Shown piece by piece: positions 30,531-37,009 of a stretch of DNA of 64,000 nt. The translations under genes were made by a program, and so were the position numbers. Source of the stretch: Oikopleura dioica (taxonomy: Eukaryota > Animalia > Chordata). Position 1 is the first letter of the stretch. Each line of letters begins with the position of its first letter. The notes under the pieces were generated by a model. It saw only the letters and a list, made by a program, of their open reading frames with translations. It ran no database searches and was not told the DNA's origin. Where the stretch lies: contig OU015567.1 of assembly GCA_907165135.1 (NCBI GenBank), positions 3,472,001 through 3,536,000 of the forward strand, given 5' to 3'.

Positions 30531-30751
30531 ATGTCGATGAGTGTGTTAGGACTTGAGAATCTGGAGAGAATTGCCAACGAGCATGTTCAGTCGGAGAAAG
30601 TCGAAGGAATCGTCTCTCAAAACATTTATAGAAATTACGGGTTTCACGATGAAATTGGATATTAAGGGGGTAGAAGGAGATTTATGAGATGAGTTAAAGC
30701 CCTCAACATCGGTTTAGAAGAATTAAAAAGCATCATGTCTAAAAATCTCGG
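30531..30751 (+). pseudogene. Short decayed coding-like fragment
   Basis: MSMSVLGLENLERIANEHVQSEKVEGIV...GY* then, frameshifted, VKALNIGLEELKSIMSKNL|GTAAG donor; stops and a frameshift. Confidence 0.2.
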
Positions 30752-31360
30752 TAAGTCAACGCCCTTCAAAGTTAGTTTCTCCGCAAACTTCATTATTGTC
30801 TCCTAAGGATCTCAATTTTGATCGTAAAAGATAAAAAAACAAGGAAGCATTTTAACTTTTTATACAAAAATCTGATGAAAAGGGTCGTCTCTTTTTGGCG
30901 ACTTCTACTTTTGAGTCAACAATTTCCCAAATGAATTTGAAAAAAGAAACGAAATCTTGCCCACTCTTCTCTCCTTCTTTCTATCAAAAATATCGTCTCT
31001 CATTACTCCTGGCATGTTCCATTCTTGCCCGCTTCGAAAACTCTAAATATCAAATATCCGCGCTCGCCAATCCCCCCAAAAAGAACACGCACACTCTTTC
31101 GAAAAAAAAGGCTGAATGCAAATATAAAAATAACGTGGAGTCACAGCAACGCAGATGATCCGTCTTCTTCCGGGGAGTTAGGGCTGATTTATTTACTTTG
31201 AAAATATCAAGCGCTCATCTTTTGCGTCTTCGCTTTGACCGCAACCTTTCAATTTTTGCGGAAGCGACCGGTTCAACAAAATCATAATTGCAATAGCAAC
31301 AGCAAAAAACGCCTTCGAAGAGGTTTTTAGTTCTCTGAGTTCAAGAAGATTTTCTGACAA

Positions 31361-31870
31361 AAAAGCCGCGCGCTGTTTTTTCTTCCTTTTTTAATGAAGA
31401 AAAAAGCCGAACGCGGCTTTTTTGGTCGGTTTTTTATCAAACTTATTTCAATATTTCTTAAGTAAAAAGCCGCAAGCGGCTTTTTCGATGTATTTTTGAA
31501 CTGTTTTTTCAGGATTTAAAAATGACTATATTCTTAATTGATCAATCTTCGTGAAAAACAAAAATGACCTGCGTGTTAGAACGACAGTAAAATATTTTTA
31601 CTTTCGACAAAAGTTGAGCAAGGGAAAATATAAAAACTCGCGCGTTATATAATGTTTGATTCGTCAGATAGCAGCGTGCTGCAACGGGTTTGGAACTTGG
31701 CGACGTGTCCGCCTGGCTAGTAGAGCTCCGCCGAGTCTAGTACTGCGCCGCGGCGGTGGTGGGGGAGCTTGGTGGAACTAGGGTGGATGGGGAGAAATTA
31801 ATTTGACAGGGCTTTGAACTCGTGGATATTAAAAATGCTTCCCAAATTAAAAAGCCGCACGCGGCTTTTT
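31361..31870. repeat. Cluster of 20-bp palindromes AAAAGCCGC-AM-GCGGCTTTT
   Basis: Copies at 31402-31421 (one mismatch), 31465-31484 and 31850-31869; half copy at 31361. Confidence 0.8.
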
Positions 31871-34420
31871 TCAAGAATAATATTTCTCGATTTTTTATGA
31901 CTTGAATCTTCTTTTTTTTTCTTGTAATTTCTAACTACAGTACTAAGACTTCTTCAAAAAAACAGGTTCTTGAATTGCGTGGAGCCCCTAGCTACGTCAC
32001 GATTCTAGCTCTGAGGGGAGCTCCAGCTCATTAAGTAACATGCGCGCTGGAGACTCCACTGGGTAGCCTGTTCAATTCAATAACACCTTTGACTACTCCA
32101 AATTCAGCCCTTTTTCGCCAGAGCGCGCCACGGCAGCTTCACGGAATTCAGCCACTCGTGAAGTTCAAGAATAATTATAGACCAAAAAACTCCACCACAT
32201 TTCTTGCGAGTCTTCGAAGAAAATGATCCTTTTAGCGGATGAAAGAATAACCATAAGATGGTTACTAAAAATATAAATAGATATTTTCCTTGATATCAAC
32301 AATTGAGAAAATTTTTGGTATAATCGTATAGAGCTCTTTTCACAAAAGGCTAAAGCAGGCTTCAAGTGAATCATGTCCTGTTTCGCGTGATATGTTCTTT
32401 TTCCGAGGCGATTCATGGATATCATAAGTTTTGTTTACTATTCTAACTATAAAAGCATAAAATGTACTGAAAGAAAACTACCGAAGCCCAAAAATTATAA
32501 TTATTTTGCAATATAAACATAATTTATTGAAAGAAGCTTATGTCATGTATAAAATATCAAAATGGGATTTTGTGGAGATTCATCGTACAACTCGAAATTT
32601 GGACACCAAGGACTTATATTTTATTAAAAACGTAATTTACTTATTACCTTGGTTCATTTTTGGTTCATATGAATGAGTTTTTTTGCTTATAAATTATGAA
32701 TGCGGTTGAGGAAGTCGTTACATCACTACACGTCGCCATTCTGATTGGTGTAGTACTCTACTAGACCGCGGTGGTGGTGGAGCAACGTTGAGGTGGCGTC
32801 CAAGATGCTTCTTTTTGGTCCAGTTAAATTTCTTTTCCTTCTGAGCGGCTCAATCTGCTTCTCGGGTAAATTTGGACAGGTTCAACCTATTCTCCAAAAA
32901 GTCCAAAAAAACTCTTTTCTTTTTTATTCGTTTTTCGGTGAAACGGTTTTGCAAGCCGTTCGAACGTCTACAGCCAGTAACACAGTAATCACGTGCTACG
33001 GGGCTTTTACATCGAAGCCGAAACTCGAGCCAACCTCGAGGGAATCCACCAAGAGAAAGAGAGAGAGAGTCAATCCGCCCGGATTAAAAAGCAAAAAGCA
33101 AGAGAACGAAGATTTCTTTTTGAATTAAAGGAAAGGCTCAATTTTTTCGGCAATTTTTCAAAAAAAAAAAGAAAAAGTAATATTTTTGTTATCTATATTT
33201 TTAAATTCAATAGGGATCGTTTCCTTTTGATATCTTCTTTAATTTGATTTAAGGGTATCTCAATGCTAAAATCAATCATTTTTCAACCTCGAAAAAAGCA
33301 GATTCTTCGTTTTGAAACAAATTCATTCTATGGGGATATTTTTACATACATGTATCGATTTATAACTTATGCCAATTGTGATGAAATCGACAGTCGATTA
33401 GATAACCCGAAGTTTGGGCTATAAACTCTCGGCGGAGACGTGTCCTCCTCGGCTCGCGTGGTTCCCGCATCGAATCCCGAGTAACTGACGTGTGGACAAA
33501 GCGCTGCCTTCCGATTAATTAAGGGTCGGAACTTCCTTTTTCTGAAGAAGTGTTCTTCTAAAGAAGTACGCTTACGCAAGGTTCTGCTTCAAGCAATGTT
33601 GCGTTAATAGTATAAAATATACAAGAACATGACAGGGACTCTTCTTTTTAATTAATTGAGGACTGACAGCGCTTGTCAAAACCTGGATCCTAATAAGGGT
33701 AGAGGATTGGTTTAATTTGTGTTAGTATTGCTGTGAGAGAATCTTAAGGAGGCACAGCTGCATCTGATTATGTTGTTGCGCTCTAAACGAGTAAAACGCG
33801 ATACGTGTAACTCAGATCTCATCAGAAATCCGAATGGGCTGCGGGCAGCTTCTCGTTGGTAGCCAATTTCATGGGCGACCATCATTGTTTGGCTCCAAGT
33901 AGCCCCAACTCGGTGTTCGCGCGAATTATCGATACGCATTAGAGCCGCTTTCTAAAATGAAAATGTTGAGCCTGAACTAAAGAAGTCCGTATCTTGTCTT
34001 GTCTGATTTCAAATCCGAATTTGTCCGGTTGAAACCAATTGGTCGATAAACGGGTTAAATCAGCTTGTAAATCCTTCCTCCTTGTATCTACTTACTACGA
34101 CTATTTCTACGTCCGACTAAACCACTTATCTTTTACTTCCATAACTTACAAGCACTACACTACAGGTATATCAAGACGAATCATTTTTTATCAAGAATTA
34201 TTGGACTCGAAATAAAAAAAAATAATTTCCTGATATATTTTGAGTCAAAATGCATATTCTTTCCTCATTTCGAAATCACCAATAAGAATCCTGGCGCCTA
34301 CGCTATCGCCTACGATTTAAATTATTTGCGTAGGCGGCTAGATTGAGCATTTAGAAGTGAGGCTTTTGGAATAAACTTATTGCTCTATCGACAGTTTTTA
34401 AATGCATTTATTAAGACACG

Positions 34421-36491
34421 ATGCTCGCCAATCCCTTTGGAATGAACAGAATGATCGATCCACGAATGGCCATGCAGCTCATGGAAGAAGCCAAGCGCAA
34501 CCAAATGATGATGCTCTCCCCTTACGATATGATGGACCCCGCTAGACTTCAGGTATTCTATAAAATCTTGGCCTTTTAGACGATGCTTCGGCGCATTTTG
34601 CGGTTCGATATCTCCCTTCCGTAATCCAATTTCGCTAATGAGAGTCAATTTAGGCGCGTCTCCGACAAATCCAGCAGGTCCAAGCCGGCCAAGCTCACAT
34701 CGCCCAGGCCGCTTCTGCCCAGGCTCAAGCCCAGCAGCAAATGATCAAGGGGCAGCATCCATCTGTCAGCTCTTCCCAGCAGAGTTCTAACACCTCTCGC
34801 CGTCAGCAAAAGGCAAAACCGTCCAAAAGAGTAATTGCCGTCGATCTCCCATCGAATTTGCAAACGATCGAGTCTGTCACCACCATTTTCTACCCATACG
34901 GAGAGGTCCTTCTCGTCAGAGTTCTCAGACCAAAGAAACAGCTCCCATTTGATCTTAAGCAATTCCAGGTTTGTCAAAAATTTGTCAGAAGAAACCATAA
35001 ATCTGATTTTTTTCAGATAAATTTGTAAAATATTTACCAAATTATGTTGATCATTCTAAGCTTCCAATGTATGCACCCTTCTCTACCAAATGGAATCCCT
35101 ATCTTTATCTTCATTCATCCCCTAAAACTCATTTAGGCCGAAATCCCCGATCTCGGAAAAACCGTCTGCGCCATCATCGAGTTCGAGCAAGCCGATGCTG
35201 CCCGATTCGCCGTTCAAGCCCTGAAGATGCGAACCAAAGCTTACGGCTTCCGACTCGCCCTTCTTGAAGCCGGAGTAAGTTACAAAATGCTTATGAGTTT
35301 ACTTCATTTACAACGCAGAGGAGAGAGCACTTGACATTTATCTGTCAAGCACATTTTGACATGAGCTTATTCTTTTGGAGATAATTTCGTTCGTGCGCGA
35401 TTTTTGACAGGCCACGTCAAATCGCTTTAAACTTACAGAACTCCATTCTTCTCTCATTCAAGCACTCTCTAATTCGGAAATCTAGAATGAAATCTCATCA
35501 TAATTTTCAGGCCGAGGAAGATCTTTACGGCCCCGAACTCGAGCCACAGCTTCCAATGCTCAAGCCTGGCCAAGCCGGCCCTGGAACAACTGACGAGTCT
35601 GGAATCGGCGAATCTGGTACAATTTTCTATTTTTAGATTTTTTTATAACAATTTATTTCAGAACGCTCTGGACGATCTTCTGGATCTGACCGTGATTCGG
35701 ATTGCGACATCAAAGAAAGATACCGGGTCAGCTCGGGATCTGAGTCTGACACTGATCTCAAAAACTTGGTAACAAAAAACCCTTCCATGATCCGTTTAAG
35801 ACGCTTTCTAGACTGAAAAATGGAACCCCGACGTTGCTGAGTTCGTTCCTGGCCAGACTTCGCCAAAGAAGAGAACGGTAAAAAACAACAGACAATCTTT
35901 CAACCCCTTTTTCACGATCAAAATTGACAATCACCAATTCTAGACTTCCAAAACATCCGTCAAAATCGGCGAAAACGGCCGCATCACCACATCCTTGTCC
36001 ATCAATCTTAGCTCTCCTAGCAAAGGTACCTTTCGAAATTGATCATGACATTTTCTTACTGTATATTCAGGACGAACAACAAGCCGATTGAGTTTGACAC
36101 CAAAGAAAGAGCAGAAGGCTCCAACTTACACTCGAGAGTACTTGTTGTCTGTCAGACATCACAATGGAAGCAAATTTACGCCCACTTTGGACTTTGAATG
36201 TAAGTTTTATCAAAAGATAAAAGAATTGTTGTGGATTCAATCCAAATAAGCCAGCAAATTATGGACATTAGAAGTAGAGTTCACACTAGTTCCTTCAGAA
36301 TTAATATTAAAAAAGCTTTCTTGGAAGACTTTTATGGTTTTCAGAAAATTTTTGCTTTACATCACTATCAAGAAATTAACCCCTTATCTTCAGGTGACGA
36401 GATGCGCCGGTACGTGCCACCACAACGCCGTACTTCTCAGCCAATTATCCAACTCTCGCCACAGCGACGCAACTCGCTCTACCGTCGATAG
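34421..36491 (+). CDS. LARP6: LARP6-type RRM protein without a La motif; Met/Gln-rich N-terminus, PAM2-like motif and YxxxxL-phi motif
   Basis: 9 exons, all GT-AG and in frame. RRM SKRVIAVDLP..IESVTTIFYPYGEVLLVRVLRPKKQLPFDL..CAIIEFEQADAARFAV matches LARP6 RRM1 (VRILKPGRELPPD..CAIVEFEE). In-frame TAA 9 nt before the ATG. Confidence 0.8.
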
Positions 36492-37009
36492 AAAGCTCCG
36501 TCTTTCAGGCGATTTTTTCGATTACAGTTTCTTCTGCAGAATGCTTTACAAGTAAAACAAACAGCCAACCATCTTTCGAACAAAATGTACAGCCCACATG
36601 TTGACTTGTCAACCCCTCTTCTTCCTTCTTCTTACAGTAAGATTCTTTCTTACAGTTAACTTCTCCGTCATTGAAGATGACTCATCCTTGCTGCTCTTAA
36701 AAAATATCTGTGCTGGATAATACCCCCTCCAGGATCGCCTACTGTTGCCCATCCTGCATCTCACCCCTCTTACTGTATAAAGCAAACTTGTACAGTGAGT
36801 GTTGCCCGTCCCTTATCCGCATTGACAAAACTTAAAAAAGTAAACATTTCTTTGGTGACAATTCTGAATTCAAATTTCTGAATAAAAACAAAATTAACTC
36901 AAAAATCATCTTTATTTTTGACTCTAACCGGAGACTTATAAACTGGGTCCCATGCACTGCATTGAAGTTTTGGATACGATCAAAACAGTTGCTCATTTTT
37001 GTTGAATTA

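What the first reader, a model, noticed from the sequence alone, without database searches (positions are those of the whole stretch)
34421..36491. La-motif-less LARP6-like RRM protein carrying both a PAM2-like motif and a canonical eIF4E-binding motif: candidate cap-poly(A) bridging translational regulator
Seen: the spliced product has a Met/Gln-rich N-terminus, a LARP6-type RRM, then KWNPDVAEFVPG (35821-35850) and TYTREYLLSVR (36127-36147). An in-frame TAA precedes the ATG, and I see no La-motif exon (QxExYFSxxNL..D.FL) in 31000-34400. Established: LARP6 normally pairs a La motif with this RRM; PAM2 (LNxxAxEFxP) binds the PABP MLLE domain; YxxxxL-phi is the eIF4E-binding motif of 4E-BPs and eIF4G. 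Inference: one small protein could bind RNA, PABP and eIF4E at once, acting as an eIF4G mimic or repressor. This may matter in an animal with trans-spliced mRNAs. I know of no LARP6 described with this combination.
Basis: partly seen in the sequence, partly recalled or inferred. Interest (0 to 1): 0.85.

Follow-up and report, generated by a model that had tools for sequence, protein, structure and literature searches.

The report
La-less LARP6 relative with PABP/eIF4E motifs
This Oikopleura dioica gene encodes an RNA-binding protein descended from LARP6 that has lost the La motif but keeps two conserved short motifs matching the known docking peptides for poly(A)-binding protein and cap-binding eIF4E, so it probably links and controls both ends of target mRNAs, though no binding has been tested.

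Summary
A nine-exon GT-AG gene (34421-36491, +) encodes 390 aa. It is identical to residues 45-434 of the unnamed NCBI model OKI2018_I69.chr2.g4842 of Oikopleura dioica.

The AG at 34414-15 does accept upstream exons: one non-coding, and one pair adding 44 aa. Neither encodes a La motif, and none was found anywhere in the window.

The folded domain is a LARP6-type RRM. Human LARP6 RRM1 (2MTG) is the only PDB sequence hit and the top Foldseek hit.

All 26 transcript-derived orthologues examined keep both motifs as conserved islands between variable linkers: KWNxxVxEFxP and Y[ST][RK][DE]xLΦS.
- A profile of the first finds the Paip2 PAM2 peptide (E 1.7e-5), then superPAM2, eRF3, Paip1 and Tob1.
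- The orthologues' profile of the second finds only eIF4E-bound peptides of eIF4G, Mextli and 4E-BP1.

On the RRM tree, La-less, 4E-motif-bearing proteins separate from canonical LARP6 (96/96). They include a second O. dioica paralogue (E4XEM0) that retains the LSA motif.

I found no description in the literature. Binding to eIF4E and PABP is inferred, not shown. The PAM2 variant (Trp for Leu, Val for Ala) is untested. I rate it a new variant of a known kind, of high interest.

The parts
30531..30606 (+). Alternative 5' coding exon A of the annotated 434-aa isoform (MSMSVLGLENLERIANEHVQSEKVE). It is followed by an apparent GA..AG intron (30607-30699).
   Evidence: The NCBI model P0149 maps here. 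There are stops immediately upstream of the ATG.
30700..30750 (+). Alternative 5' coding exon B (ALNIGLEELKSIMSKNL), with a GTAAGT donor. It is spliced over a 3.6-kb intron to 34416.
   Evidence: Seven reads of run X20 (another O. dioica lineage) end ...AAAAATCTC before 34415, in frame with the ATG.
33979..34165 (+). Alternative non-coding first exon (5' UTR) spliced to 34416.
   Evidence: X1 contig record 1 joins 33979-34163(+2) to 34414(+2)-34515. The exon has an in-frame TGA and no in-frame ATG.
34416..34552 (+). Exon 1. The conserved start ATG is at 34421. It encodes the Met-rich N-terminal motif MLANPFG..DPRM..SPYDMM.
   Evidence: All 22 orthologues in the alignment with a complete N-terminus start at this position (ML or MM; one carries a 4-residue extension).
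34654..34968 (+). Exon 2. Gln/Ala-rich linker, then the first half of the LARP6-type RRM (from about 34825, KRVIAVDLP...).
35137..35274 (+). Exon 3. Second half of the RRM (TVCAIIEFEQADAARFAV...LALLEAG).
35511..35616 (+). Exon 4. Conserved post-RRM stretch EEDLYGP..PQLPMLKPG and ESGI.
35662..35768 (+). Exon 5. Ser/Asp-rich acidic linker.
35812..35877 (+). Exon 6. PAM2-like motif KWNPDVAEFVPG at 35818-35853.
35944..36025 (+). Exon 7. Conserved NGRITTSLSINL (35974-36009), predicted as a beta-hairpin; function unknown.
36071..36199 (+). Exon 8. Canonical eIF4E-binding motif YTREYLL at 36127-36147, followed by SVRHHNGSKFTPTLDFE.
   Evidence: (helix).
36394..36491 (+). Exon 9. Conserved basic tail EMRRYVPPQRR (36399-36431) and LSPQRR..RR, then the TAG stop.

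Best explanation
The gene encodes a La-motif-less descendant of LARP6. It has one folded LARP6-type RRM, embedded in disordered sequence that carries conserved short linear motifs.

The most likely mechanism is that of an mRNA-bound adaptor:
- the RRM, possibly with the basic tail, holds the protein on target mRNAs (inferred);
- the YTREYLL helix occupies the dorsal surface of an eIF4E-family cap-binding protein, in competition with eIF4G (inferred from motif identity, conservation and predicted helix);
- the KWNPDVAEFVPG peptide docks on the MLLE domain of PABP (inferred; this is a variant PAM2).

The protein has no MIF4G or eIF3/eIF4A-recruiting region. The expected result is therefore a closed but translationally silent or stored mRNP, as with Cup, Maskin, 4E-T or Mextli, rather than eIF4G-like activation.

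Shown here: gene structure, transcription, absence of a La motif, LARP6-type RRM fold, motif conservation, and profile similarity to solved PAM2 and 4E-binding peptides. Not shown: any binding, any RNA target, or the direction of the effect on translation.
For: Gene and transcripts.

LARP6-type RRM:
- phmmer against PDB with an orthologue's RRM finds only 2MTG, E 4e-6.
- AlphaFold2 gives pLDDT 88-98 for residues 145-245 of P0149.
- The Foldseek top hit is 2MTG, E 9.9e-6.
- In a phmmer search of 1.84 billion representatives, canonical LARP6 proteins (La plus RxPxGPxGxxGF) are the more distant hits.

No La motif.

Family:
- In the RRM tree, the 24 rows lacking a La motif and carrying a 4E motif and the 12 La-bearing rows fall on opposite sides of one branch (support 96/96).
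- All 26 distinct orthologue sequences keep both motifs.
- In the 25-row orthologue alignment, conservation is 0.77-0.87 in the motifs against 0.42-0.57 in the linkers.

PAM2:
- Profile A4 against PDB gives Paip2 PAM2 (1jgn_B) at E 1.7e-5, then superPAM2, eRF3, Paip1 and Tob1.
- Longer relatives carry a canonical LNxxAxEFVPR at the same place in the motif series.

4E motif:
- AlphaFold2 predicts a helix at residues 381-390 within disordered sequence.
- The orthologue profile A3 hits only four PDB sequences, all eIF4E-bound peptides: Drosophila eIF4G (two), Mextli and 4E-BP1.
- The long-form profile A2 hits Mextli at E 0.0022 and Drosophila eIF4G at 0.014, and aligns LPNIPEL with the LPTIP of 4E-BP1.
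- The relative P0031 scores 20.9 bits on Pfam eIF_4EBP.

Chance co-occurrence of both motifs is below 1 in 200,000 shuffles.
Against: - Pfam reports nothing above threshold on the O. dioica protein: no RRM_1, PAM2 or eIF_4EBP.
- The PAM2-like motif departs from the consensus at two positions that contact MLLE in known complexes (Leu3 to Trp, Ala7 to Val). The significant PDB match of profile A4 partly rests on the 7 canonical long-form sequences in that profile.
- The E-values of the orthologue-only 4E profile are individually weak (0.16-1.2).
- No clear non-canonical 4E-binding motif is recognisable downstream in O. dioica.
- From my own knowledge (Martino et al. 2015; not checked here), the human LARP6 RRM1 needs the La motif to bind RNA, so RNA binding by this lone RRM is not assured.
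- Expression evidence is thin: metatranscriptome contigs and a few reads. The species-labelled runs barely map, probably because they come from another lineage.
Confidence: 0.55

Rival explanations
1. Only the eIF4E-binding motif works as proposed. The Trp/Val PAM2 variant no longer binds PABP, and either binds another MLLE domain (for example the UBR5 type), binds another partner, or is a conserved remnant.
For: The motif deviates at consensus positions 3 and 7 in all 26 orthologues. The Pfam PAM2 model gives no hit on P0149 and only 11.7 bits on orthologue P0136.
Against: The variant is itself strictly conserved, which argues for a partner. The EFxP core and the Asn are kept. Sister long forms carry canonical PAM2 at the homologous place in the motif series. 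The profile finds only PAM2 peptides at the top of the PDB list.
Confidence: 0.2
2. The protein is an eIF4G-like activator. By bridging eIF4E and PABP it closes the loop and stimulates or stabilises translation of bound mRNAs.
For: The same two contacts define the eIF4G closed loop. LARP4 and plant LARP6 use PAM2 to stabilise mRNAs (general knowledge).
Against: There is no MIF4G/HEAT domain, nor any other folded domain besides the RRM. A YxxxxL-phi peptide competes with eIF4G for the same eIF4E surface (established for 4E-BPs).
Confidence: 0.1
3. The conserved islands serve partners unrelated to cap or poly(A), for example intramolecular contacts with the RRM or granule or transport factors. 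The resemblance to PAM2 and 4E-binding motifs would then be convergent or coincidental.
For: Other equally conserved islands have no assigned partner: NGRITTSLSINL, ESGIE and RYxPPQRR. A bare YxxxxL-phi is common by chance (17% of shuffles).
Against: The extended motifs match solved eIF4E-bound and MLLE-bound peptides specifically. Both motifs together occurred in 0 of 200,000 shuffles.
Confidence: 0.1
4. It is an ordinary LARP6 whose La-motif exon was missed.
For: Upstream exons are indeed spliced to the AG at 34414-15.
Against: Those exons are non-coding or encode 44 unrelated residues. No La motif exists in the 64-kb window. Transcript-derived orthologues start at the same Met. A whole clade, including the paralogue E4XEM0, lacks the La motif.
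Confidence: 0.02

Closest known systems
LARP6 (Acheron; human RRM1 structure 2MTG)
   Same: The RRM is of the LARP6 type by sequence and by predicted fold. A paralogous branch of the same La-less clade, including O. dioica E4XEM0, keeps the LARP6-diagnostic C-terminal LSA/SUZ-C motif RQPRGPxxGxxGF.
   Different: There is no La motif and no recognisable LSA in this protein. A PAM2-like motif and a YxxxxL-phi motif have been gained; the motif search found the latter in none of the canonical LARP6 hits, and a stricter PAM2 pattern matched none of them either. Deragon 2020 (PMC7928011) states that all LARP6 proteins have La, RRM and LSA.
Plant LARP6B/C and LARP4/4B (LARPs with PAM2 or PAM2w)
   Same: A LARP-family RNA-binding protein coupled to PABP through a PAM2-type peptide. 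A variant aromatic residue in PAM2 is also known from LARP4 (PAM2w; PMC7356810, listed).
   Different: Those proteins keep the La module and have PAM2 N-terminal to it. Here PAM2 lies C-terminal to a lone RRM, the Trp sits at the Leu position rather than the Phe position, and a 4E-binding motif is present.
Mextli, Cup, 4E-T and Maskin (mRNA-tethered 4E-BPs)
   Same: An RNA-binding or RBP-recruited protein carrying a canonical 4E-binding helix. The family's 4E module profile matches the Mextli peptide best (5abx_B, E 0.0022).
   Different: The RNA-binding domain differs (LARP6 RRM rather than KH/MIF4G or none), and a PAM2 is added. These proteins are not homologous outside the motif.
4E-BP1-3 / Thor
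   Same: The motif YxRxxL-phi is followed, in the long-form relatives, by LPNIPEL at the spacing of LPTIPGV in 4E-BP1. There is a sub-threshold Pfam eIF_4EBP hit in relative P0031.
   Different: 4E-BPs are small proteins of about 120 aa with no RNA-binding domain. O. dioica also has a canonical 4E-BP (phospho-4E-BP1 signal, PMC6883708).
eIF4G and Paip1/Paip2
   Same: eIF4G contacts both eIF4E and PABP. Paip2 has the closest PAM2 peptide (SNLNPNAKEFVPG against EKWNPDVAEFVPG).
   Different: There is no MIF4G domain and no PAM1. This protein is far smaller than eIF4G and has an RRM.

Membership tests
LARP6 | La motif (winged helix, ..FYFSxxNLxxDxFL..) N-terminal to the RRM | tested here: not met
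   No Pfam La hit on P0149. No regex hit in six frames. tblastn and an HMM of 21 La motifs against the whole window give best E 0.4 and 1.1. Upstream exons encode no La motif.
LARP6 | LARP6-type RRM1 | tested here: met
   An orthologue's RRM finds only 2MTG in PDB (E 4e-6). The AlphaFold2 model's top Foldseek hit is 2MTG (E 9.9e-6, 113 columns aligned to the 116-residue chain).
LARP6 | C-terminal LSA / SUZ-C motif (RxPRGPDGxxGF) | tested here: not met
   No regex or Pfam SUZ-C hit in P0149. The motif is present in the paralogous branch (P0025/E4XEM0, P0029, P0032, P0042; SUZ-C 16.4 bits, sub-threshold). Whether EMRRYVPPQRR is a degenerate LSA is undecided.
PAM2-containing PABP partners | PAM2 consensus xxLNxxAxEFxP (Leu/Phe at position 3, Ala at 7, Phe at 10, Pro at 12) | tested here: inconclusive
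   N, E, F and P are kept, but position 3 is Trp and position 7 is Val in all orthologues. Pfam PAM2 does not hit P0149. The family profile finds Paip2 PAM2 at E 1.7e-5 and then other PAM2 peptides.
PAM2-containing PABP partners | Binding to the PABP MLLE domain | not testable with these tools
   This needs ITC, NMR or pull-down with the O. dioica PABP MLLE domain.
eIF4E-binding proteins (functional class) | Canonical YxxxxL-phi motif in a disordered region that can form a helix | tested here: met
   YTREYLL is conserved as Y[ST][RK][DE]xL-phi-S in all orthologues examined. AlphaFold2 predicts a helix at 381-390 flanked by low-pLDDT sequence. Profile hits are restricted to eIF4E-bound peptides.
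eIF4E-binding proteins (functional class) | Non-canonical lateral-surface motif 15-30 residues downstream | tested here: inconclusive
   Long-form relatives have LPNIPEL aligned with the LPTIP of 4E-BP1. In O. dioica and its orthologues only a weakly conserved (T/A)PK(M/L) or FTPTL lies at that distance.
eIF4E-binding proteins (functional class) | Binding to eIF4E in competition with eIF4G | not testable with these tools
   This needs cap-analogue pull-down, ITC or a co-crystal.

The most novel reading that the evidence does not exclude
Larvaceans, and perhaps other marine zooplankton, evolved a new family of mRNA-specific translational regulators from LARP6. They discarded the La motif and acquired a 4E-BP-like eIF4E-binding module. 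In this gene's branch and its long-form relatives a PAM2 is present as well, so that a single small protein clamps the cap-binding protein and PABP on the same message, forming a silent, protected closed loop. This could contribute to the dormancy of oocyte-stocked mRNAs in O. dioica, and the conserved Trp/Val PAM2 variant may reflect co-evolution with the larvacean PABP MLLE domain.
Probability: 0.35. Interest if true: 0.82.

Novelty: new variant of a known kind. Interest (0 to 1): 0.7.

Why it matters
LARPs are defined by the La motif, and LARP6 by La plus RRM plus LSA (PMC7928011). This gene belongs to a conserved, multi-paralogue clade that kept the LARP6 RRM, lost the La motif and gained motifs for the two proteins that mark mRNA ends.

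If the contacts are real, three things follow:
- It would be a rare natural case of one small RNA-binding protein carrying both a 4E-BP-type module and a PAM2. That would make a compact, testable model of closed-loop repression or mRNA storage.
- It would show that a LARP RRM can function without its La partner.
- It would extend the variability of PAM2 (Trp at the Leu position).

It also gives a candidate direct basis for links between LARP6 and eIF4E-family mRNPs, hinted at by the co-purification of zebrafish Larp6a/b with eIF4E1b (PMC10883267). It is relevant to an animal whose stored oocyte mRNAs are dormant and trans-spliced (PMC6883708).

Tried and rejected
- Pfam on single exons gave nothing. 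The whole protein could only be submitted once the identical NCBI model P0149 had been recovered.
- A metagenome scan with exon 8 returned one false positive (L005, GC 54%).
- Contigs L001-L004 of related lineages stop before the motif exons.
- ESM Atlas gave only weak leads (scores up to 0.88), pointing to RRM-only clusters for the RRM fragment and to LARP6 clusters for the two full-length relatives.
- The three species-labelled RNA runs hardly map at 95% identity. X20 carries the substitutions of a sister lineage, so no depth or 5'-end profile could be obtained.
- A possible further junction 33121>33979 in one X1 contig (20-nt side, non-canonical ends) was not accepted as real.
- Taxonomic origin of the relatives could not be determined. 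Thirty cluster look-ups gave names only for O. dioica and one nemertean LARP6. A 26-kb genomic contig carrying a long form shows multi-kb introns but no taxonomic marker.
- The GIGYF-type YxYxxxxL-phi motif does not fit the sequence.
Full report
**Observation**

Reading 33800-36900 and assembling the open frames gives nine GT..AG exons and a 390-aa protein ending at the TAG at 36489-91.

The model is identical over all 390 residues to residues 45-434 of the unnamed NCBI protein Oidioi.mRNA.OKI2018_I69.chr2.g4842.t1 of Oikopleura dioica (P0149). That also identifies the organism.

Contigs of a seawater metatranscriptome (X1) confirm introns 1, 3, 4, 5 and 6, and intron 7 through a loose end. 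The remaining junctions are confirmed by transcript-derived orthologues that are colinear with the model.

**The 5' end**

The AG at 34414-15 is a used acceptor, with two alternative upstream exon sets.

- An X1 contig joins a 187-nt exon (33979-34165) to 34416. This exon has an in-frame TGA and no in-frame ATG, so the ATG at 34421 is the start for that isoform.
- The NCBI model instead uses two short coding exons: 30531-30606, an apparent GA..AG intron, then 30700-30750. These add 44 residues in frame. Seven reads of an O. dioica-labelled run (X20, a sister lineage judging by its substitutions) run on before 34415 with a consensus that matches 26 of the last 30 bases of exon 30700-30750 and stays in frame.

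Neither alternative encodes a La motif. Of the 25 aligned orthologues, the 22 with a complete N-terminus start at the methionine equivalent to 34421 (one has a 4-residue extension), and none carries the 44-aa extension.

A regex, tblastn with 21 La motifs, and an HMM built from them find nothing in the whole 64-kb window. Pfam finds no La domain on the full protein.

**What the folded part is**

The exons taken singly gave no Pfam hit and only a weak LARP6 RRM match.

A fragment from a related species that contains the unsplit RRM (P0005) finds exactly one PDB sequence, human LARP6 RRM1 (2MTG), at E 4e-6.

An AlphaFold2 model of P0149, built on a 50-sequence alignment, has one confident domain: residues 145-245, pLDDT 88-98, with beta-alpha-beta-beta-alpha-beta topology. 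Its best Foldseek match in the PDB is again 2MTG (E 9.9e-6). The rest of the protein is predicted to be disordered, with two exceptions:
- a short helix at 381-390, which falls on the 4E motif;
- a low-confidence beta-hairpin over NGRITTSLSINL.

**The family**

A phmmer search with exon 2 against 1.84 billion representatives gave 86 hits. They fall into two classes.

- The more distant class is canonical LARP6, with FYFSDxNIxKDAFL and a C-terminal RxPRGPDGxxGF. One member is named la-related protein 6-like, from the nemertean Tubulanus.
- The closer class has no La motif. Most of its full-length members carry Y[ST]R[DE][YF]L[LM]S downstream of the RRM.

In a maximum-likelihood tree of the RRM, the 24 rows lacking a La motif and scoring for a 4E motif lie on one side of a single branch and the 12 La-bearing rows on the other (support 96/96).

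The La-less clade has three branches.

(i) The orthologues of this gene, together with longer relatives. The longer forms carry a canonical PAM2 (LNxxAxEFVPR), then NGRVxTS, KLDLT, and KYSRDYLLSLKE..LQLPxxLPNIPELLPT.

(ii) Short forms with RRM, a 4E motif and a LARP6-type LSA (IRQPRGPxxGxxGF). These include O. dioica CBY19515.1 / E4XEM0, so O. dioica has at least two La-less paralogues.

(iii) Forms with an N-terminal PAM2-like AEAPAFQP.

The retained LSA in branch (ii) and the LARP6-type RRM together show that the clade descends from LARP6.

**Are the motifs more than chance?**

Within the protein's own composition:
- a bare YxxxxL-phi turns up in 17% of shuffles;
- the extended Yx[RK][ED]xL-phi turns up in 0.29%;
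- a loose PAM2 pattern turns up in 0.028%;
- both together turned up in none of 200,000 shuffles.

Conservation is the stronger argument. All 26 distinct orthologous sequences keep [KN]W[NS]xxVxxFxP and Y[ST][RK][DE]xL-phi-S. These sequences are environmental plus the NCBI model, down to about 47% identity. In the 25-row orthologue alignment, column conservation is 0.82 and 0.77 in the two motifs, 0.87 in the RRM, and 0.42-0.57 in the linkers.

Profiles give independent support.
- The PAM2-like profile (16 orthologues plus 7 long forms) has the Paip2 PAM2 peptide of the PABC complex 1JGN as its best PDB hit (E 1.7e-5). It is followed by superPAM2, eRF3, Paip1 and Tob1.
- The orthologue-only 4E profile hits just four PDB sequences. 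All are peptides crystallised on eIF4E: Drosophila eIF4G (two), Mextli and 4E-BP1, at E 0.16-1.2.
- The long-form 4E profile hits Mextli at E 0.0022 and Drosophila eIF4G at 0.014. It also aligns its LPNIPEL with the LPTIP of the 4E-BP1 non-canonical motif.
- One long form scores 20.9 bits on Pfam eIF_4EBP, against a cut-off of 24. Three long forms score 13-16 bits on Pfam PAM2.

**Mechanism**

The protein has three candidate handles: an RRM, a PAM2-type peptide and a 4E-binding helix. It has no MIF4G or other folded domain.

By analogy with Cup, Maskin, 4E-T and Mextli, a YxxxxL-phi peptide on an RNA-bound protein sequesters cap-bound eIF4E from eIF4G. A PAM2 would add a hold on PABP.

I therefore favour an mRNA-specific repressor or storage factor that forms a silent closed loop. 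An eIF4G-like activator is less likely.

All binding steps are inferences. The caveats are as follows.
- The PAM2 variant has Trp for Leu3 and Val for Ala7 in every orthologue. It is conserved, but untested against MLLE.
- The non-canonical 4E motif is not evident in O. dioica.
- Pfam is silent on the O. dioica protein.
- A LARP6 RRM without its La motif may bind RNA poorly (my own knowledge; not tested here).

**Context and novelty**

- Deragon 2020 states that all LARP6 proteins have La, RRM and LSA, and that invertebrates have a single LARP6 (PMC7928011).
- Full-text searches combining LARP6, PAM2 and eIF4E, LARP6 and Oikopleura, or RRM, PAM2 and 4E-binding motif found no description of such a protein.
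- The LSA binds STRAP/unrip (PMC5291280).
- Zebrafish Larp6a/b co-purify with eIF4E1b (PMC10883267).
- O. dioica has a canonical phospho-regulated 4E-BP and translationally dormant, trans-spliced oocyte mRNAs (PMC6883708).

The components are known kinds. The combination, and the loss of the La motif, appear to be new.

**Limits**

- The relatives other than the two O. dioica proteins come from unnamed marine meta-omic assemblies. The taxonomic range is therefore unknown, though larvaceans are the obvious guess. One genomic contig of a long form has multi-kb introns.

Noticed in passing
window 30607-30699: The intron inside the annotated 5' extension has GA..AG borders (GAATCG...TTAAAG) rather than GT..AG. 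This fits the non-canonical introns reported for this genome. It rests on the NCBI model only.
   Followed up: partly
window 32668-33059: Run X19 (O. dioica-labelled, oligo-dT) lays reads on both strands here, inside the 3.6-kb intron, with fixed differences at 32848 and 32887. This may be an unannotated transcript or a repeat; reads are cut at a repeat at 33151-33190.
   Followed up: no
window 33102-33121 / 33973-33979: One X1 contig continues upstream of 33979 with 6 unmatched letters and 20 nt matching 33102-33121, with non-canonical ends. This could be a further 5' exon or an assembly chimera.
   Followed up: no
P0120/P0121 (O. dioica CBY19515.1 / E4XEM0, another locus): The annotated 527-aa paralogue carries a 115-aa Arg-rich N-terminal extension that is absent from the 408- and 412-aa environmental (JGI/Logan) members of its cluster, which start at MQFNQDQ. 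This is probably a mis-annotated start. The protein is La-less, with RRM, a degenerate 4E motif (YSRDFLT) and an LSA motif.
   Followed up: partly
P0021, P0119, P0135 (environmental relatives): A third La-less branch has an N-terminal PAM2-like peptide (LRAEAPAFQPTF or LRPDAPSFTPS), then NRVVSSxTIFL, Y[FT]TR[DE]ELL and a C-terminal GF. This resembles the N-terminal PAM2 placement of plant LARP6 and LARP4.
   Followed up: no
P0022, P0026, P0028, P0030, P0037 and others (long forms): The long forms carry further conserved islands of unknown role: N-terminal QFQPFYYY, GRxSPxLLSDPSD, and a second PAM2-like peptide with Leu for Phe (INxRAxDLLP).
   Followed up: no
window 35974-36009 and 36399-36431: NGRITTSLSINL (a predicted hairpin) and EMRRYVPPQRR are as conserved as the two named motifs but have no assigned partner. 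RYxPPxxR recalls the N-terminal RYIPPHLR of DDX3 (from memory; not tested).
   Followed up: no
L001 480-760: In a related species, the stretch between the first and second coding parts holds a tandem repeat that reads FENFGNFEKFGNFENF in one frame.
   Followed up: no
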